Source of the DNA: Octopus sinensis
Lineage: Eukaryota
Assembly (NCBI RefSeq): GCF_006345805.1
Contig: NC_042998.1
Span: 90,458,001-90,522,000 of the forward strand
Reading direction: 5' to 3'
Length of the DNA: 64,000 bases
Below the pieces are notes generated by a model. The model did no database searches and was not told where the DNA came from. It was given only the letters and a program-made list of their open reading frames with translations. Shown piece by piece: positions 12,170 through 62,327 of this stretch. A program made the translations under genes and the position numbers. The first letter of the stretch is position 1. Every line of letters begins with the position of its first letter.

Positions 12170-12560
12170 GGTGCAGGAGTGGCTGTGTGGTAAGTAGCTT
12201 GCTTACCAACTACATGGTTCCGGGTTCAGTCCCACTGCGTGACACCTTGGACAAGTGTCTTCTACTATAGCCTCGAGCTGACCAAAGCCTTGTGAGTGGA
12301 TTTGTTAGATGGAAACTGAAGGAAGCCCGTCATATATGTGTGTGTGTGTATGTATATGTTCATGTGTCTGTGTTTGTCCTCCCAACCTTGCTTAACAACC
12401 GATGCTGGCATGTTTACGGTCCCGTAATTTAGTGGTTCGGCAAGAGGGACTGATAGAATAAGTACTAAGCTTACAAAGAATAAGTCCTGGGATCGATTTG
12501 CTCGACTAAAGGCAGTGCTCCAGCATGGCTGCAGTCAAATGACTGAAACGAATAAAAAAA
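12170..12560 (+). mobile_element. tRNA-derived SINE (octopus-type), near full length
   Basis: Head GGTGCAGGAGTGGCTGTGTGGTAAG (A-box-like) and GGTTCAGTCCCA (B-box-like), internal (TG)n, tail ...GACTGAAACGAATAAAA. Related copies occur at 33005, 43403, 41425, 31520, 56960 and 62430, and reversed at 29580, 34770, 44790 and 49010. Confidence 0.85.
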
Positions 12561-20965: not shown

Positions 20966-22380
20966 TGCTAAATAATATCTAACGGATAAAATTCGTCTCC
21001 TGCTTTTCATTTGACTGATATATGTAATCAAAATTGCCTTAACTCATTGCATACATACATGTACATCTATTTTCCTATCCTTGGGTTGACCGATGCCTTG
21101 TGAGTGAAATTCGGTAGAAACTACAAGAGCCTGTCGTGTATGTGTTTGTTTCTACTAGTCTTTGCATTAACATTACTTGAGTATCAATATTATCGTTTAT
21201 CATCATCGTTTATATCCTCCATAAACAAAACGTCTAGTGACTTAGAATTTGAACATGCAAAAACAAGAAAAACAAGGGTTGGAGTCAAGCTGGGCATCTG
21301 GATATAGAATACTGTCTCAGTTAAGTATCATACAACTCATCTTAGCATGAAAAAGGGAGGCATAAAAAAAAGTGACAATGATAAAGATGATTAGGATATC
21401 ATATTTGTATTTCCACAAGATAATTTGTTACTCCTGCTCTGGTTGAGTAACTAATAAATTTTCTTGTGAAAATACAATAGCTCAGAGTCAAAATATACAT
21501 GGTCCAGTTGCTATTAGTGCACTTCATTCTCTTTTCTCTCTCTCTCTCTCTGGTTGTAACCAATTCATGATTGGAAACTCTGACCTACACTTGATAAATG
21601 TATTTAATTCATTGTCTTACATACAATACTGTAATATTCCCAAATGGTTCATTTATCAGTAGCTTGCAGCACTAAATTCACTTCCTCCACTTGTAGGCCT
21701 GGAAAAAATCTCCAATCCTACCCACTAATTGCCAGCTACATGCCTTAGTCTCAATTTAGATGCAGATTTTAAGTTCTGATTATGGCTACTGTACAACACC
21801 TCATTCTACAAACGTCTCCATAGCACAATGGAATATTCTCTTTCAAGTGGATGGCCATCCAATACTCCTTTGAAAGTTGAGCAATCTGGTAAATTACCTG
21901 AAAATTTGAGACTCTAGTAATTGGTGGCAGACTTTATCTGTTACCTGATTTAACACCACCATCTGTCCTTTGGACCAGGTCTCTTGTTCTGGGAATATTT
22001 TTTCTCCTACCAGTCCCAAATGCTCTGCAAAGAGCCATGGGCACTGACTAAATCATTCTTTAAAAAATGTAAATGTATATCTTAACCACAGGTTGAACAA
22101 AAAATAAACTGTTTTCTATTATTTCTATTATGACAACAGCTTTCTGTGGCATCTTTCATCTTGCTTAGTTTTCTGTACATGTTGCAAATAATTTGCTTGC
22201 ATCAAAATTGATAAATACATGTTCCCTGCTATAGCCTAATAAACAGATAAGTGTTCTCCAGTATTTCTTCTAAAAATCAAAGACAAAAAATTCAGGGTTT
22301 TTTTTTTTTTTTGGTAATAGGCTTGAAATCTAAATTAATAAAGCCAGTTTCTTTAAGCTAGGCTTGGACAGGTTGAATAT

Positions 22381-22517
22381 TTAACTCTTTTGATACCAAT
22401 CTGATAAACTGCCCTCTGTTCTATGATACAAACTTGTTTCATACTGATCTGAATAAAAACCTCCCATAAAAATTTCATGTTTATGTTCCAAACATCAGTT
22501 TCTTAAAGACTGAGTTA
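22381..22517 (+). mobile_element. Left half of a TTAA-ended (piggyBac-like) MITE, interrupted by mariner at TA 22516-22517
   Basis: Starts TTAACTCTTTTGATACC; ends ...GACTGAGT-TA immediately before the mariner TIR. Confidence 0.55.
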
Positions 22518-23212
22518 CGAGGGGCGTTCAATAAGTAATGCCCCTGACCCACTTCCCATAGCAGTAGAGCAACGAAACTTGGCACAGTTATTAGTCTTTT
22601 TCTACATAGGAACCACCCAGAGTTACGCATTTCTCCCATCGTTTGATGCGGCTCTGGAGACCATTTTTGTAGAAGAACCCAGCTTGGTCCTCCAACCTCA
22701 ACGTGACTTCAGAAATCAAGGCTGCATCATCTGGGAAACGCTTTCCTTTCAAAAACAACTTCATGATTGGGAAGAGGTGAAAATCAGAGGGTGCAAGGTC
22801 AGGAAAGTAGGGGGATGGGGAGGAGTTCATAGCCATACGCCTGTGCTTCTGATCTGGCGACAAGCGAGTTGTGGACCGGAGCGTTGTCCTGCAGGAGGAG
22901 GATGCTTTTGCTGATCTTGCCCCGCCTCTTGATTTTGATAACTTCTCTTAATTTCCTCAAAAGTGAAGCATAATAGGCTCCTGCAATTGTGGTACCCTTT
23001 GCCAGGAAATCTGTCATCACTACTCCGTCCTGGTCCCAGAAGACTGTGAGCATGACCTTGCCAGCGGAGGGCTGCACCCTTGCCTTCTTTGGAGGGGGTG
23101 AGTTGAGTCACGGTGCTTCCACTGCATTGACTGTGTAATCAGTCTTTTGAAAAATTTTGACTCATCTTGGCACATCTCAAAATTCACCCTCGAGCACTTG
23201 ACGCGTTCTTGC
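22518..23212 (-). mobile_element. 5'-truncated copy of the mariner at 23932-25209 (3' ~0.7 kb), inverted
   Basis: Near-identical reverse complement of ~24475-25209 with an intact 3' TIR (TA|CGAGGGGCGTTCAATAAGTAATGCC). Carries a 45-bp internal deletion and a small insertion. Confidence 0.95.
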
Positions 23213-23857
23213 GTACCATAGCTTGATAAGTTGATAGTATCATCATACTCTGTTTCTGATGCGAAAAAGTTCCCAATCAAAACACCTTGAAATGGTTTAG
23301 AATGTATACAACTAAATTGGTATCCTGTATTAGGTACAGTTAGCTAAAGACAGACTCTTATGTTCATTTCATAGTATGAGCATCTAGTTGTTTGATCACT
23401 TCTGAATTAGCTTTTGAACTGGCTGAGTATTCCACAGATGTATGTACCTTAAATGTAATTCTCAAGCAGAATCAAGTGTGACAAAGCTAGACCTTTCACA
23501 GTCCATCTAACAGGTTCTGTCCACTCAAATATACTCACAAGGCTGACGTTGACCTGAGGCTAGTGAGTGCATTTGCTCAAGATGCCACCCAATGGAATTG
23601 AACCTTGAACTTTATGGTCGTGTAAGAAACTTTTTAATTACTCAGCCACACAATTTACTACAGTAAAGAACAATTGTGTAATTTAAGGGCTTTTCTTTAC
23701 CAGGATCAAGGAATAATCAGAAAAATAATAACATTCAAAGTTCCAAGTAAGGATGGGAAAATACTTTTTCCTTATTTTAGAAATCATCATTCTAATAAAA
23801 TGGAATTTAAAATTTAATGAGTAGAAATTTTGTATAAGCATTTGCTCTTCTAGTTTA

Positions 23858-23931
23858 TTAATCCTTTTGTTACTATATTTGTGCTGAAATATGCTATCTT
23901 TGTTTCAAATAATGAAAAATTTAGTAAAATA
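23858..23931 (-). mobile_element. Right half of the same TTAA-ended MITE, now inverted
   Basis: TTAATCCTTTTGTTACT is a direct repeat of the 22381 terminus. It runs into ...TTAGTAAAA-TA and the mariner 5' TIR. Confidence 0.55.
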
Positions 23932-25209
23932 CGAGGGACGTTCAATAAGTAATGCCTCTGACCCACTTGCAGTTGTTTGATCTAGCATGTGCAATCATTT
24001 ATATCTCTATAGAGTAAGTGGCAAATTACAGCTCTGAATTAATTGTGGTTTCTGATTTACAGGTGTTTGGACCGAGTCAAGTGTGAAATGGAGCCTGTTG
24101 AGTGTCGAGCAGTGATCCGGTTTTTGTATTTGAAAGGACGCACACCACGGGAGACTTTTGATAAAGTGAAAGTAACTTATGGTGATGATGCCCCATCATA
24201 TGACCTTGTAAAACGCTGGCATCGTGAATTCAAACATGGTCGGAACTCTGTGGAAACAGCTCCCAGATCTGGTCGCCCCCTTCTGCCATTGATGAGGCAT
24301 CTGTCCGTCAAGTTGAGGCTGCCATTTTGGAAGATCGACGCATAATTATTCGCCAAATAGCCCATGAGGTCAAGATGAGTACCGGGTCTGTGGAAACTAT
24401 CATTCATGACCATTTGCATCTGCAAAAGGTGTCTGCCAGATGGATTCCCAGGTTGCTCACGCCTTTCCAGAAGCAAGAACGCGTCGAGTGCTCGAGGGTG
24501 AATTTGGAGATGTGCCAAGAAGATGAGTCAAAATTTTTCAAAAGACTGATTACACAGGATGAAACCTGAGTCCATCACGATGACCCAGAGACCAAAGCCC
24601 AGTCAATGCAGTGGAAGCACTGTGACTCACCCCCTCCAAAGAAGGCAAGGGTGCAGCCCTCCGCTGGCAAGGTCATGCTCACAGTCTTCTGGGACCAGGA
24701 CGGAGTAGTGATGACAGATTTCCTGGCAAAGGGTACCACAATTGCAGGAGCCTATTATGCTTCACTTTTGTGGAAATTAAGAGAAGTTATCAAAATCAAG
24801 AGGCGGGGCAAGATCAGCAAAAGCATCCTCCTCCTGCAGGACAACGCTCCGGTCCACAACTCGCTTGTCGCCAGATCAGAAGCACAGGCGTATGGCTATG
24901 AACTCCTCCCCATCCCCCTACTTTCCTGACCTTGCACCCTCTGATTTTCACCTCTTCCCAATCATGAAGTTGTTTTTGAAAGGAAAGCGTTTCCCAGATG
25001 ATGCAGCCTTGATGTCTGAAGTCACGTTGAGGTTGGAGGACCAAGCTGGGTTCTTCTACAAAAATGGTCTCCAGAGCCGCATCAAACGATGGGAGAAATG
25101 CGTAACTCTGGGTGGTTCCTATGTAGAAAAAGACTAATAACTGTGCCAAGTTTCGTTGCTCTACTGCTATGGGAAGTGGGTCAGGGCATTACTTATTGAA
25201 CGCCCCTCG
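23932..25209 (+). mobile_element. Full-length mariner (Tc1/mariner, DD34D-type) transposon, 1278 bp
   Basis: TA TSDs at 23930-23931 and 25210-25211. TIRs CGAGGGACGTTCAATAAGTAATGCC / GGCATTACTTATTGAACGCCCCTCG. Confidence 0.97.
24088..25137 (+). pseudogene. Mariner transposase pseudogene
   Basis: MEPVECRAVIRFLYLKG HTH, PRSGRP, WIPRLL, QDET*, QDNAPVH and PDLAPSDF motifs. Disrupted by a 1-nt loss in a C-run near 24280, a TGG>TGA stop at 24567-24569 and a 1-nt loss in a C-run near 24910. Confidence 0.95.
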
Positions 25210-25447
25210 TAAGTTTTTACAGGTAATAACTTCATTCTTTGAGTTACATACACTGAGTTCACCTAAAACGTTCCATATCTTTCAAGACCGCCAGTCTTGA
25301 GGTATTTAGAATGACTCTTAATCTTGCTTTGCCTGAGGTTATTGGGGGGGAAAAGAGAATGATGTACATTTGATATATAACCAAAGAAACCCCTGAGAAA
25401 AATGTACTCTTTTAGAGATTTTATTCTGAACAGACATTGCTATAGAA

Positions 25448-33004: not shown

Positions 33005-33445
33005 AGGCACAGGCATGGGTGTGGTAAGAAGCTTGCTTCTCAACCACATGATCTTGAGTTCAGTCCCACTGTGTGGGACCTTGAGCTAGTGTCTTCTACC
33101 TTAGCCTCAGGCTGACCAAAGCCTTGTGAGTGGGTAGATGGAAACTGAAAGAAGCTCATCATCATCATCGTTTAATTCTTCCTTCCATGCTAGCTTGGGT
33201 GGGACTATATATATGTGTGTGTGTGTATATAATAAATGTTTGTGTCTGTGTTTGTCCTCCACCTCTGCTTGACAAGCGGTGTTTGTGTGTTTATGTCCCT
33301 GTAACTTAGTGGATTGGCAAAAGAGACTGATAGAATCACAGGTCTAAAAAAGAAACAAGTACTGGGATCAATTCATTCAACTAAAAATTCTTCAATGCAG
33401 TACCCCAGCATGGCTGCATCTCATCTGAAACAAGTAAAAGACAAT
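33005..33445 (+). mobile_element. tRNA-derived SINE just 3' of NDUFB3
   Basis: Same head and tail as 12170-12560, with a short RTE-tail insert near 33157-33205. Confidence 0.8.
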
Positions 33446-34582
33446 AGCAATATGGATAGTGGACTGACAGAGATGTTAGAGCATCACACAACATACCTGG
33501 CTCTTTACATTCTAGTTTCAAATCCTACCAAGGTCAACTTTGCCTTTCATCCTTTCAAAGTCTATAAAATAAAGTACCAGTCAAATACTGGAGGAAATGC
33601 TATTCAACTACATTTCAAATAAAAAAAAAAAGACGAAAAGTTTTTTGTCTCCATTTGTTTAGTACAACATGAGTAGAAGAGAGGGCAATGACAAGATGAA
33701 CTTAGGTGAGAGCATAAAAGAAGCAAGTTATTGGGGTGAAAGAGTGGGAGAAAAGGAAGTAATGAAAGAGAGTCGGTAATGAGAAGAGTTAATGAGAGAG
33801 AGAGAAGTAGTGATGATAGCTACATGTTTGATGATATGAGAGACAGCAAGTGATGGATAGTCATAGAGATGGACAACAGTTAAAGAAAAGCAATGTATGT
33901 CAATCACAAGTGATTCCGGTGGAGAAGAAAGAGTAGTGACTTACAGTCTGGAAGTTTGATGTTGGGTATGTTAGGTATAAGCAGATCTGATAGAATCCTG
34001 TTTCACAAGCACTGTGACAGGAGTGAGTGAAAGTAATGATGATGGTGAAGAAAATTGAATATCAGAACCCCAACATTATTTCATGTTATACAGTAGCATA
34101 TTACAGTGAACAGGAGTGATAAAGAGATGAGTGTGAAAGATGCAAGGGGACAGACTGAAAAGAGGAGAGGATGTGAGACAAAAGGTGCTAAAGAGGCAGT
34201 GAGGAATAGCTGGAGATTTCACAAAAATATAATGGATAAAAGAAGAGACTTTGTAGATATATTATGCATTCCAGCCTCACCATACACGCATAGATGGACG
34301 GAGCTCCAGCAGCAGGTATCAATCATGCAGTCTTTCTTACTTTGTTCCATATCTTGCTAGGTTTCCTTCTTCTGTAAGTTCCACCCTCTTTGAATGCTCA
34401 GCAGTTCATTATAAGTTGCCATCCTGTAAATGTATCATTTACCTATACCAATGCACTCTTCCCTTTAGTCCACTGAATCTGATTTGAGAATATCGTTCAG
34501 TTTTCTCTTAGTCGATTTGTACTTCATTGTTTGTACACCAAAACATTACATATCCAGTGGAGCATGAAACAAAGAATACACA

Positions 34583-34584
<2 letters not shown>

Positions 34585-34623
<39 letters not shown>

Positions 34624-34640
34624 GTCTGTCTGTCTATCTG

Positions 34641-34708
<68 letters not shown>

Positions 34709-34752
34709 CCTACCTATCTATCTACATATCTATCTATCTATCTATCTACCTA
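34585..34752. repeat. (TCTA)n tetranucleotide microsatellite
   Basis: Directly visible. Confidence 0.98.
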
Positions 34753-34926
34753 TATGTATATCTGACAGGCTTCTTTCAGTTTCCATCTACCAAATCCACT
34801 CAAGGCTTTGGTCAGCCCAGGGCTATAGTAGAAGACACTTGCCTGAGGTGCCATACAGTGGGACTGAAGCCGAAACCATGTGGTTGGGAAGCAAATTTCC
34901 ACATAGCCATGCCTACACCGATTAGG

Positions 34927-47297: not shown

Positions 47298-50149
47298 AAA
47301 TCAGGGTATATAATGCTTATGTTTGTTTAACCGTCACATTTTTTATGTATACCATTGAACTAGTTACCTGACAAGAAATGATGATGAGTGCTAGAAGAAA
47401 AAGAGTTATAACAAAATTTAAGATAAATCTGAGATAAAATAGTTTGACTTAATTTTGGCTAATAATTATTCACAAGGAGATGATGGTCCTCTGCATAAAT
47501 GTAGCAACATTAACATGTTACTGCAGTCAATGGAAATAATATGGAGAGCAAATTAATAAAGCAGGAGCTAACAGAGTTAAGTAATGATAGTTACAATGAA
47601 AATTGAGTGAAGATGGTCTCCAATCTTTAAGAAAAGTTAATGTGACATTTGTTAGGCCAGACAAAATAAATTTCAAAATACATGGCTTGATACATTGGTT
47701 TCTGCAGAAAAAAAAAAATTGATCAATATCAAATATAAACAAACACAAAATTATCCAGCTTTTGGTAAACACATGAAACACCTTTTTCTTGTTAATTATT
47801 GATAAAAATAGGGATTTCTTGCCACAGAACTCTTTTTTGTTAGAAAGGGTTATACTCAATTAAATGGTATTGGTTTTAATGATTTTTAAAGAATGTGGCT
47901 TCAAGACAATAGGGCACTGGATATAATCTATATAATGAAACATGGGCCATGACTGCTAAGGACATGTGTAAGCTTGCAAGGAATGAAGCCAGTATAATCC
48001 GATGGATGCGTAATGTCAGTGTGTATACTCGACAGAATGTAGGCACCTTGAGAAAAACTACCAAATTCATTCATAAGGCAATGGTTAATCTAAGGCTACA
48101 GAAGAACGCACTTATTCAAGGTGCTGTGCAATAGGATTGAACCTGAAACCACTTGGCTGTAAAGCAAACCTGTTATAATTACACTGTTTTGCCTGAACCA
48201 CTATTCTTATAAGTACCTTTACACTACTTCTACAATGTTTCATCCAAAAGTCTATAAACATTTCTTTTGATAAGCTTTTTTTTGTTAAGCTATTGAATTG
48301 TAATACTTGAAAACAGATGAATAGAAAAAATATTTTTTTAACGTAAAGCTTAATCAAAGTTCTATTTTTATACTTGACTTAATAGTAAATTACTGATTGG
48401 TGTGAATTTTAAAAATAATTTGACTTTATCATGTATATTATCATGTTAACCCTGGCACATAAATTGACAACTAGAATTATTAGCAATAACAACTATAAAA
48501 CAAATGGCTTATTCTGTAACCCAGATTTCTGGCTAGTCGTTAACTTCTTTTTCAGAGAAGGCTTTGCAGGATTGGTTTCTAAGGTTTGCAAGAATACTTG
48601 AACTAACCACTGAAAGCTAATATTGATTTTGTAGCACTGCTTTTACATACATTAAGTACCTGCAATTAAAGGTTAAGTGACTTTATCAATGACACAATAC
48701 AAACTTCCAGCCTCTCAGCTAATTGTTCACCACACCTATACATTGACCAGCTGATCTGTGAAAATAGTATCATCATCATTGTTTTAATGTTCACTTCTCA
48801 CTGGAATTTGTTGAGGTGGATTTTCTATGGCTGGATGCCTTTTTTATTGCTAACCTTCACCTGTTTCCAAGTAAAGTAATATTTTCCCATGATCATGAAT
48901 ATTTTCATAGAAGTCTGGAAGCAAAGACACTACTAATGTGATGGCAACAATTGTTTACAACTCTTATGATGTCAAGGCAAGGACAGTAACACGTACACAT
49001 ATACGATAAGCTTCTTTTCAGTTCCTGCCAACCAAATTCACTCGGAAGGCTTTGGTCAGCTGGTCACCTCTTCACAGTGCTACACAATGGAACTGAACTT
49101 GAAACTATTTGGTGGGAAAATAAAATTTCTCACCACACAGCTATGTTGGGGCTTACATCTAATATCAAAGCTCTATGGAACTTCTACATTAGATATATTT
49201 CAACTTATGGCTCACAAACATACTGTTTCTTCACTGCTTTTTCTATAACTCAATGGTTATGAAGTTCATTTCACAATCATGAGGCTCAGGGCTTGATCCT
49301 TGAACATCATGATTGCATGGTACCTTGGACAAATGTCTTTTATGTTAGACTTTGATCAACCCAGGTAGAGTGTATCAATAATTCAAAGGCCCAGTCTTGT
49401 CACTTACTGTATTATGCTGATTCTGCTCAAGGATTAATTTAAGGATGTGCATCTCTTTGAAATACTCAGTCACTTAACTGCTAATTCAGTGAATATGTAG
49501 TTTGGATAATCGAACAACAGAACGCTCATTATTGAAACAGACGAAGATCCATTTTACATCCTCTGCTCTTCTGAACAAGCAGGTTGCAAGTTATTTCCAC
49601 CCAAGTCTACATTACATTCACTTTTCATCTTTTTAACTCTCTCATAGCGTCTCACAGGCCTTAGAATTCATACGATTATGGTCGTTTTTGTCTCGAATCA
49701 CAACTCTCTGAAATTCTCTTCCTGCCCACATTTTCCTTACAAATGTGGATTAAGTCTCATAAGTTTAGGCGAGCCTGCCAAAGTGATGCCCATCGCCCTT
49801 TACACCTGACTTAACCCAAGGAAAGCAACCATGCTTAGTGAATGATATATGATACTAATATCTACAAAATCTGTAGTTTCAAATACAACGAACAACAAAT
49901 ATAATCATTCTTGAGTATGTAAACATATACGTGTACAAATAACTATAAATAAACATGTTTAACATCAAGGATAAAATTGAGTATAAATAAACATCAAGGC
50001 CTCCGCAAGTAAATTTAATTAAACGAGTTACTGTCTTTTCTTAAATACCCTATCCTTTTGGTTTTGGGATAATCAAAACATCTGATTCTAAATATTTCAA
50101 CACATTATTTAAATTATTTACTTCTGATTCTATTTATTTTCTTTTTCTT

Positions 50150-57984: not shown

Positions 57985-58338
57985 CACATCCTGGCACTCT
58001 GTCAGTTATGACAATGTGGGTTCTAGTTGTTCCGATCAATGGAACAACCTGCTTGTGAAATTAATGCTCATGTGGCTGAGCACTCTGTACACATGCATAC
58101 CCTTAACATAGTTCTCAGGGATATTCAACATGACACAGGGTGTGACAAGGCTGGCCTTTGAAATACAGGTACTACTCACTTTTTCCAGCTGAGTGAACTG
58201 GAATAACATGAAATAAAATGTCTTGCTCAAGAACACGTCACTGGGAATTGTCCTCACAACCTTACGGTTGTGAGCCAAATACCCTAGCCACTATGTCTTG
58301 CGCTTTCACATGTCTATGCAGACACACACACGTGTATT

Positions 58339-58384
<46 letters not shown>

Positions 58385-58715
58385 TATAGAGAGAGAGAGA
58401 GAGAGAGGGAGCACTCCGTCTATTATGACAAAGAGTGTTCCAGCTGATACGATCAACGGAACAGCTTGCTCGTGAGATTAATGTGCAAATTCTGAGTACT
58501 CCACAGATACACGTACCCCTTTTTACATATTTCTCAGAATTTCAGTGTGACACAGAGTGTGACTAGGCTGGCCCCTTGAAATACAGGTACTCATTTTTGC
58601 CAACTGAGTACTGTAAAATAAAGTGTCTTGCTCAAGGACACAATGCACTGCTGGGAATTGAACTCACGATACTATGATCATGAGCCGAATACCCTAACCA
58701 CTAAGCCAAGCGCCT

Positions 58716-61013: not shown

Positions 61014-61154
61014 CGATTCAGAGCGGATCTCAGAATTAAACAGCCGAAATCTGCGATGAGAATCGGTTTCTGACTGAAGAACGAAGGCTTTGAATGACCC
61101 GTCTGTCTCTTATGTTCGTCCCTTCGTGTATTTCACGTTATTTATTTATGTAAA

Positions 61155-61546
61155 GGTTTATATTATATATATACATACATACATATATATATATATACAT
61201 ACATATATATATATACATACATATATATATATACATACATACATATATATATATACATACATATATATATATACATACATACATATATATATACATACAT
61301 ACATACATATATATATATACATACATATATATATATACATACATATATATATATACATACATACATACATATATATATATACATACATACATACATATAT
61401 ATATATATACATACATATATATATATATACATACATATATATATATACATACATACATATATATACATACATACATAATATATACATACATACATATATA
61501 TATATAAATACATACATATAATATATACATACATACATATATATAT

Positions 61547-61642
<96 letters not shown>

Positions 61643-61657
61643 TATATATATATATAC

Positions 61658-61707
<50 letters not shown>

Positions 61708-61800
61708 TATTACATATATATATTATATACATATATATATATATATATACATACATACATATATATATACCATATATATTATATATATATACATACATAC

Positions 61801-61835
<35 letters not shown>

Positions 61836-61836
61836 C

Positions 61837-61911
<75 letters not shown>

Positions 61912-61912
61912 C

Positions 61913-61943
<31 letters not shown>

Positions 61944-61977
61944 CATACATACATAATACATATATATATATATATAC

Positions 61978-62008
<31 letters not shown>

Positions 62009-62009
62009 C

Positions 62010-62044
<35 letters not shown>

Positions 62045-62069
62045 CATACATACATATATATATATATAC

Positions 62070-62102
<33 letters not shown>

Positions 62103-62124
62103 CATACATACATATATATATATA

Positions 62125-62157
<33 letters not shown>

Positions 62158-62216
62158 CATACATATATATATATAATATATATATATACATACATATATA
62201 TATATAGATACATATA

Positions 62217-62257
<41 letters not shown>

Positions 62258-62293
62258 TATACATACATATATATTATAGATACATATATATAT

Positions 62294-62327
<34 letters not shown>

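What the first reader, a model, noticed from the sequence alone, without database searches (positions are those of the whole stretch)
22381..25211. Frozen mariner-driven inversion plus duplication that split and flipped a host MITE
Order on the + strand: MITE left half - TA - mariner 3' half (reverse, 22518-23212) - g - TA (23214-23215) - ~640 bp - MITE right half (reversed) - TA - full mariner (forward) - TA (25210-25211). Three direct observations support a single event. (1) The two MITE termini, TTAACTCTTTTGATACC (22381) and TTAATCCTTTTGTTACT (23858), are direct repeats, whereas TIRs should be inverted; flipping 23214-25209 back restores GAGT-TA-TTTTACTAAA and inverted termini. (2) A TA sits at both ends of the flipped block. 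(3) Both mariner copies share the same inactivating C-run frameshift (CTCCCCATCCCCCTACTTTCC). Inference: an already non-coding mariner was mobilised in trans. Only its 3' end was cut and inserted into a TA ~0.7 kb away, inverting the element and its flank. The donor end was then repaired by abortive gap repair that copied ~0.7 kb from the sister chromatid. The product (22518-25209) has two outward-facing intact 3' TIRs, so it could move as a compound element carrying host DNA. It is a rare, fully readable snapshot of how long-TIR palindromic elements arise.
Basis: partly seen in the sequence, partly recalled or inferred. Interest (0 to 1): 0.8.

Follow-up and report, generated by a model that had tools for sequence, protein, structure and literature searches.

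The report
Mariner copy beside its broken stump
A dead mariner transposon sits 0.7 kb from an inverted half-copy of itself, which looks like the scar of an excision that was only partly repaired; this is an ordinary transposon history, and the proposed inversion of a split MITE is not supported.

Summary
There is a 1278-bp degenerate mariner (23932-25209, +) and an inverted 695-bp 3' stump (22518-23212, -). Each is bounded by TA, and both share the same C-run frameshift.

The "split MITE" part is not supported. The two termini match at 13/17, which is chance level: four independent matches that good occur between the same two 300-nt flanks. There is no TSD, no significant hairpin and no other copy in 64 kb. 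That match was the only evidence for an inversion.

A simpler history fits every base:
- A mariner inserted at TA 22516.
- It was excised and probably re-inserted 0.7 kb away at TA 23930 (a local hop).
- The donor gap was repaired from the left end only, for about 0.7 kb, then end-joined to the right flank.
- That join kept the second TA (23214-15) and a G (23213) that could be a remnant of the lost 5' end.

New evidence supports aborted gap repair. All five stump-specific changes (two substitutions, -3, -45 at CAG microhomology, +5 tandem duplication) lie within 152 bp of the truncation point, and none lies in the other 584 bp (P about 4e-4).

The spacer's ancestral orientation cannot be determined here, because no same-species sequence was reachable. 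This is a new instance of a known kind, of low to moderate interest.

The parts
22516..22517 (.). TA flanking the 3' TIR of the stump (left target-site copy of the first insertion)
22518..23212 (-). 5'-truncated mariner stump: 3' 695 bp, equivalent to 24473-25209 of the full copy; 3' TIR at 22518-22554
   Evidence: inverted match to the full copy; alignment with outgroups
22807..22825 (-). C-run lesion in the stump, identical to that of the full copy
23103..23212 (-). Innermost part of the stump, holding all five stump-specific derived changes: G>A, G>T, -3 (AAG slip), -45 (CAG microhomology) and +5 (ACTCA tandem duplication). Proposed scar of error-prone, aborted repair synthesis.
   Evidence: polarised with L003, L004, L001, L005; P = 3.9e-4
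23213..23213 (.). Single G between stump and TA. It fits a 1-2 nt remnant of the lost 5' TIR end (...CTCG|TA), with C 23212 as possible 1-nt microhomology.
   Evidence: sequence; 5' TIR end read from 23932-23937; inference
23214..23215 (.). TA.
   Evidence: TA background 9.5%
23216..23929 (.). 714-bp host spacer of undetermined ancestral orientation. It contains a dispersed SINE-like repeat at about 23402-23650.
   Evidence: no orientation signal, no junction-spanning repeat
22381..22515 (.). No evidence that it is a repeat or is related to 23858-23929.
23930..23931 (.). TA left of the full copy
23932..25209 (+). Full-length (1278 bp) degenerate mariner. TIRs at 23932-23968 and 25173-25209. 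Lesions: 1-nt loss after 24275, TGA stop at 24567-24569, C-run lesion at 24908-24921.
25210..25211 (.). TA right of the full copy

Best explanation
Proposed history: two ordinary TA insertions of one non-autonomous mariner lineage in opposite orientation, with the present order of host DNA being the ancestral order.

1. A mariner that already carried the C-run frameshift sat in reverse orientation at TA 22516, between ...GACTGAGT and CCATAGCTTG....
2. Transposase supplied in trans excised it normally, by cutting both ends.
3. The element re-inserted about 0.7 kb away at TA 23930, giving the full copy with its own TA duplication (a local hop).
4. The donor gap was repaired by copying from the sister chromatid. 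Synthesis ran only from the left end and became error-prone over its last 150 bp or so.
5. Synthesis stopped after about 0.7 kb, and the end was joined to the right flank. That flank still carried its TA and 1-2 nt of the 5' TIR overhang (G 23213).

Shown: the anatomy, the TAs, the shared lesion and the error cluster. Inferred: the hop itself, the template and the order of events.

The resulting 2.7-kb unit has two perfect outward-facing 3' TIRs and about 0.7 kb of inverted homology. It could in principle move as a composite, or flip its interior by recombination between the arms.
For: - Anatomy and the four TAs.
- Identity as a mariner.
- No third copy in 64 kb, so two copies 0.7 kb apart point to a local event.
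- With four outgroups, the stump has 5 private changes. All lie within 152 bp of its truncated end, and none lies in the remaining 584 bp. The full copy's 4 private changes are spread 1/3 across the same two parts. P(all 5 inner) = 3.9e-4; Poisson P = 1.7e-3 at the full copy's rate.
- All three stump indels are slippage or microhomology types.
- Aborted homologous repair after transposon excision, with synthesis from one or both ends and then end joining, and with translesion polymerases taking part, is well documented in Drosophila (PMC3330096). Abortive gap repair is the standard account of deleted mariners.
- Closely linked, inversely oriented pairs arise from single elements at about 1% frequency for Ds in rice (PMC3429523).
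- G 23213 matches the last base of the lost 5' end...CTCG|TA.
Against: - No same-species copy, haplotype or orthologue could be reached. It is therefore not shown that A-TA-B is the empty site, that the two copies are sisters rather than two members of a young subfamily, or that the frameshift predates the event.
- The error cluster rests on 5 events.
- The G footprint is a single base (about 19% by chance), and the TA next to it is 9.5-27% by chance.
- Strand skew, palindromy of the flanks and junction-spanning repeats gave no signal for or against this order.
Confidence: 0.5

Rival explanations
1. Independent history of the two copies. Two separate insertions of a young, already frameshifted mariner subfamily landed 0.7 kb apart. 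The left one later lost its 5' part, either by excision with aborted repair (template: sister chromatid, or the neighbouring copy in cis) or by a plain deletion. Gene conversion between the inverted arms may have kept the outer 584 bp nearly identical.
For: The same anatomy is explained. The copies differ by 5 substitutions and 4 indels. The C-run is a recurrent lesion site in relatives, so a shared lesion could be subfamily-wide. Family copy number is unknown.
Against: No third copy in 64 kb makes chance proximity unlikely unless the family is very abundant. A plain deletion does not predict the one-sided error cluster or the G-TA at the breakpoint. In the inner 153 bp the stump has 5 private changes and the full copy has 1, which is not what two equally old independent copies would show.
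Confidence: 0.2
2. The ancestral order was A-TA-[reverse mariner]-TA-MITE right half-rc(spacer)-TA-C. Only the 3' end was cut and inserted into a TA about 0.7 kb beyond the element. This inverted the element plus its flank, and the broken donor end copied about 0.7 kb from the sister chromatid. A variant reaches the same ancestral order by canonical steps: a hop in the mirror-image direction, followed by recombination between the inverted arms that flipped the interior.
For: All four TAs are compatible with it. The product has the topology of an intramolecular inversion flanked by inverted element copies. The aborted-repair component is supported. About 0.7 kb of roughly 99% inverted homology could mediate a flip.
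Against: Its only specific evidence, the direct 'MITE termini', is at chance level, and the rebuilt MITE has no TSD, no fold signal and no other copy. A single strand transfer does not create a TA duplication, and mariner cleavage requires synapsed ends (established knowledge). G 23213 is unexplained. It needs more, and rarer, steps than the preferred model.
Confidence: 0.12
3. The composite 22518-25209 was built elsewhere, by a hop plus aborted repair, and then transposed here as one unit using its two 3' TIRs. The spacer would then be passenger DNA, and the empty site would be ...GACTGAGT-TA-AGTTTTTACAGG....
For: The unit has perfect 27-nt terminal inverted repeats with TA on both sides (I4). 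Macrotransposition by the outer ends of linked elements is known for Ac/Ds (PMC3429523).
Against: No second copy of the spacer or composite in the window. It needs one more step. There is no positive evidence that A and C were contiguous.
Confidence: 0.05
4. Assembly artefact: an inverted partial duplication created by mis-joined or chimeric long reads.
For: Inverted repeats around a short spacer are a known artefact pattern. No reads were available here.
Against: The arms are not a perfect palindrome. They differ by 9 events, including a 45-bp deletion. The spacer is unique, and every junction falls on a clean TIR/TA boundary.
Confidence: 0.05

Closest known systems
mariner family (Tc1/mariner superfamily, DD34D), type element Mos1
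   Same: About 1.3 kb long, TIRs of about 37 nt, TA target duplication, HTH_48 + Transposase_1 domains, D,D34D spacing, and a full-length match to Mos1 transposase.
   Different: Both copies are non-coding. The full copy has two frameshifts and one stop, and the stump lacks the 5' 541 bp of the element. The nearest intact relative found is 89% identical in protein and 93% in DNA, from an unnamed sequencing run.
Aborted homologous (SDSA) gap repair after transposon excision, as in the Drosophila P{w^a} assay, and 'abortive gap repair' as the origin of deleted mariners and MITEs
   Same: A donor-site product that keeps one element end, has a limited synthesis tract, and is closed by end joining at or near the other flank. 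Error-prone polymerases take part (PMC3330096; PMC3814204 and others).
   Different: Here it is inferred from a fossil, not observed. Synthesis appears to have come from one end only, so a whole TIR was lost rather than an internal segment. The mutation cluster at the end of the tract is an observation made here, not a described hallmark.
Closely linked Ac/fAc (fractured Ac) and paired inverse Ds elements of maize and rice, the substrates of alternative transposition
   Same: A full element lies next to a terminally deleted or second copy in inverse orientation a short distance away. The pair arises from a single element by short-range transposition and can drive macrotransposition, inversions and deletions (PMC3429523).
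   Different: Those are hAT elements in plants with 8-bp TSDs. No rearrangement product of the pair is demonstrated here. Here the usable outer pair is 3'+3'.
Inversion by intramolecular replicative transposition (Tn3, Mu, IS elements)
   Same: The topology is the same: an inverted segment flanked by two inverted element copies, with the target duplication split between them.
   Different: Mariners are cut-and-paste elements, not replicative ones. The left copy is partial, and inversion of the segment is not demonstrated.

Membership tests
mariner (DD34D Tc1/mariner) | TA target-site duplication flanking the element | tested here: met
   TA at 23930-31 and 25210-11 for the full copy; TA at 22516-17 next to the stump's TIR.
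mariner (DD34D Tc1/mariner) | Short terminal inverted repeats and a length of about 1.3 kb | tested here: met
   The element is 1278 bp. The ends match over 27 nt at 96% including the TA (I6), and over 39 nt at 95% between the stump's 3' end and the full copy's 5' end (D1).
mariner (DD34D Tc1/mariner) | Transposase with N-terminal HTH and a DDE-type catalytic domain with D,D34D spacing | tested here: met
   Pfam HTH_48 (E 1e-8) and Transposase_1 (E 8.5e-23). Match to Mos1 3HOS at E 4e-41 over residues 5-348. There are 34 residues between the second and third D in the conceptual translation. The reading frame is broken, so the copies are not autonomous.
   The match is 13/17. Four independent matches of at least 13/17 occur between the same two 300-nt flanks. 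Only 18/40 match when extended.
   The flanks are ...GTTGAATAT and TAAACTAGAA.... The only shared motif is the TTAA inside the proposed termini.
   No copy of either half occurs elsewhere in the 64-kb window, even at E<10. The rest of the genome was not available.
Transposon-mediated inversion (alternative or one-ended transposition) | The segment between the two junctions is inverted relative to the ancestral or allelic order | not testable with these tools
   No orthologue or haplotype could be reached. Strand skew of the spacer is about 0. No repeat spans any candidate junction.
Aborted gap-repair product of excision | One intact element end, a truncated interior, and a junction at the original flank with retained TSD and footprint | tested here: met
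   Intact 3' TIR plus TA, truncation at the position equivalent to 24473, then G-TA. The G-TA alone is weak evidence.
Aborted gap-repair product of excision | Copied from a sister or homologous template that still carries the element | tested here: inconclusive
   The outer 584 bp has no stump-private change against the full copy plus outgroups. That fits a recent common template but does not prove one.

The most novel reading that the evidence does not exclude
A mariner end acting alone or in a non-canonical pairing would have inverted the element together with 0.7 kb of host DNA, while the broken donor end copied half an element. That would be a readable natural example of a cut-and-paste element producing the inversion-plus-duplication topology normally associated with replicative transposons. 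A more modest novel reading is that the error cluster is a natural fossil of mutagenic, non-processive repair synthesis at an aborted SDSA event in a wild invertebrate genome.
Probability: 0.12. Interest if true: 0.6.

Novelty: new member of a known kind. Interest (0 to 1): 0.25.

Why it matters
This is mainly a corrected annotation. The locus is a degenerate mariner plus the stump of an excised copy, not a demonstrated inversion of a MITE.

Its modest value lies in three points:
- The stump carries a compact, polarised cluster of slippage-type errors next to its truncation point. That is the kind of signature expected from aborted, low-fidelity repair synthesis, and it could be looked for genome-wide as a marker of past excisions.
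- The pair forms a 2.7-kb unit with two perfect 3' TIRs and 0.7 kb of inverted homology. It is therefore a candidate substrate for composite transposition or flip-flop inversion.
- Intact relatives at 87-95% identity in unrelated marine samples suggest that a still-active lineage moves among marine invertebrates.

Tried and rejected
- Other copies in the window. BLAST of 22300-25300 against the window found none of the mariner or of either 'MITE' half. A sensitive search with rebuilt ancestral sequences for three histories found no repeat spanning any candidate junction.
- Orientation of the spacer from strand asymmetry. The AT and GC skew of 23216-23929 is about 0, so this test has no power.
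- Palindromy of candidate empty sites. None stands out. The best is the full copy's own flanks, at P = 0.13.
- Same-species copies through the protein collections. Exact look-ups of 11 window ORFs failed. A search with the frameshift-containing 107-aa ORF gave nothing above 92% identity.
- DNA pattern scans. The left flank and the frameshift allele gave no match in metagenome contigs, and the frameshift allele gave no match in viral contigs.
- L001 alone as outgroup. It mis-polarised site 24621. The closer outgroups L003 and L004 showed that the full copy is the derived one there (CpG to TpG).
- A remnant 5' half of the stump's element downstream of 25211 (the nested-insertion idea). None exists.
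- tRNA scan of the window. Nothing was found.
Full report
**What is there**

- TA (22516-17).
- A reverse-oriented 3' part of a mariner (22518-23212).
- A single G (23213).
- TA (23214-15).
- 714 bp of unique, AT-rich host DNA (23216-23929).
- TA (23930-31).
- A full-length forward mariner of 1278 bp (23932-25209).
- TA (25210-11).

The outermost 29 nt on either side are perfectly complementary (I4).

The conceptual translation of the full copy has Pfam HTH_48 and Transposase_1. It aligns end to end with the Mos1 transposase of PDB 3HOS (E 4e-41). It has 34 residues between the second and third catalytic aspartates. This is a true mariner.

The element is dead:
- One base is missing after 24275.
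- TGG has become TGA at 24567-69.
- The run CCCC-AT-CCCCC-TAC at 24908-21 is two bases short of intact relatives.
- The stump carries the identical C-run lesion.

Neither the mariner nor any flanking piece has another copy in the 64-kb window.

**The two copies are not identical**

They differ at nine places. I retrieved four related elements from public assemblies to polarise the differences: L003 at 95.5% DNA identity, L004 at 94%, L001 at 93% with an intact 350-aa ORF, and L005 at 87%.

With these outgroups, the stump is derived at five places:
- G>A at the position equivalent to 24486.
- G>T at 24506.
- A 3-bp AAG slip.
- A 45-bp deletion between CAG microhomologies.
- A 5-bp ACTCA tandem duplication.

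The full copy is derived at four places: a CpG>TpG at 24621, A>T at 24771, T>G at 25014, and one G lost from a G-run in the 3' TIR region.

The stump's five changes all lie within 152 bp of its truncated end, and none lies in the other 584 bp. The full copy's four are spread 1 and 3 across the same two parts. The chance that five uniformly placed events all fall that close to the end is 3.9e-4. At the full copy's own rate, 0.83 events are expected there (Poisson P = 1.7e-3).

This is what a repair tract that lost fidelity and processivity just before it was abandoned would look like. Aborted homologous repair after transposon excision is well documented in Drosophila: synthesis runs from one or both ends, then end joining closes the gap, and translesion polymerases take part (PMC3330096). 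Abortive gap repair is also the standard explanation for deleted mariners.

**The MITE and the inversion**

The case for an inversion rested on two 17-mers, at 22381 and 23858, being direct rather than inverted.
- They match at 13 of 17. Between the same two 300-nt flanks there are four independent direct matches of at least 13/17, so the match is what chance gives in 34% GC DNA.
- The rebuilt 209-bp element matches at only 18/40 terminal positions and has no flanking duplication.
- It folds no better than shuffles (z = -1.4).
- Neither half recurs in the window, even at E<10.

The TA on both sides of the "flipped block" is weak evidence. TA is 9.5% of dinucleotides, and a TA lies within 0-2 nt of an arbitrary point 27% of the time.

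The shared frameshift is real, but the same C-run is independently broken in relatives: a 22-bp deletion in L003/P0032, and different shifts in P0122 and P0127. The site is therefore lesion-prone, and whether the lesion is subfamily-wide remains untested.

**A simpler history that fits every base**

1. A non-autonomous mariner sat in reverse orientation at a TA between ...GACTGAGT and CCATAGCTTG....
2. It was excised canonically.
3. It re-inserted about 0.7 kb away at the TA between ...TTTAGTAAAA and AGTTTTTACAGG....
4. The donor gap was extended from the left end only, by copying the sister chromatid's element for about 0.7 kb, and was then end-joined to the right flank.

This assigns the TAs at 22516 and 23214 to the first insertion, and those at 23930 and 25210 to the second. 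It also explains the otherwise orphan G at 23213. The lost 5' end reads ...CTCG|TA, and mariner excision leaves a few element bases on the flank (established knowledge of Mos1 excision, not tested here).

A one-ended reaction, by contrast, makes a single strand transfer. It does not by itself duplicate the target TA, and mariner transposases cleave only after the two ends are synapsed (established knowledge). Short-range generation of inversely oriented pairs from one element is known for Ds in rice, at about 1% of regenerants (PMC3429523). The configuration of a full element plus a nearby terminally deleted copy is that of the maize Ac/fAc pairs that drive alternative transposition.

**What cannot be decided here**

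Four histories give exactly the present sequence:
- A local hop without inversion.
- Two independent insertions, with later truncation of one.
- Arrival of the whole composite as one unit.

They differ only in which flanks were once contiguous. I looked for internal signals and found none:
- The spacer has no strand skew.
- No candidate empty site is unusually palindromic.
- No dispersed repeat spans any candidate junction.

- Exact look-ups of eleven window ORFs failed.
- The best protein fragments were 91-92% identical.
- Pattern scans of metagenome and viral contigs found nothing.

My ranking therefore rests on parsimony, known mariner chemistry, the G footprint and the absence of any real evidence for a split MITE.

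**Verdict**

The locus is a new instance of a known kind of transposon scar. Its most useful feature is the polarised error cluster at the stump's inner end. Its most interesting potential is that the unit, with two perfect 3' TIRs and 0.7 kb of inverted homology, could move as a composite or flip its interior.

Noticed in passing
window 23402-23650; diverged copies at 12179-12318, 33025-33131, 48062-48182, 49078-49141, 49418-49489 and 58052-58555: A dispersed SINE-like repeat (62-77% identity between copies) lies inside the spacer. It touches none of the mariner junctions, so it does not help to orient the spacer. ARAGORN finds no tRNA in the window.
   Followed up: partly
L001/L002 (Logan SRR31412027, SRR31412068), L003 (Logan SRR9105617), L004 (ENA ERZ27277065), L005 (TARA Oceans metagenome scaffold), P0048: The closest relatives of this mariner are in unnamed sequencing runs and ocean metagenomes. 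They show 87-95.5% DNA identity, and one has an intact 350-aa ORF. An annotated mantis shrimp protein (Oratosquilla oratoria 'GVQW3-like') is 87% identical over its 201 aa. This patchy spread suggests horizontal transfer among marine invertebrates.
   Followed up: partly
window 24908-24921 and 22807-22825; L003, P0032, P0122, P0127: The C-rich stretch that encodes ...LLPHPPY... just upstream of the third catalytic aspartate is independently deleted or frameshifted in several relatives. It is a lesion hotspot (or an error-prone homopolymer in assemblies), so a shared lesion there is weaker evidence of common descent than it looks.
   Followed up: partly
window 22518-23212 versus 24473-25209: About 0.7 kb of roughly 99% inverted homology lies 1.26 kb apart. 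Recombination between the arms would flip the interior and swap which site holds the full-length copy. The locus could therefore be polymorphic for orientation, and any orthologue test must score both isomers (inference).
   Followed up: no
window about 34500-34900 and 61100-62300: These are microsatellite-rich blocks, visible as long repetitive ORFs. The 60-62 kb tile has only 21% GC.
   Followed up: no
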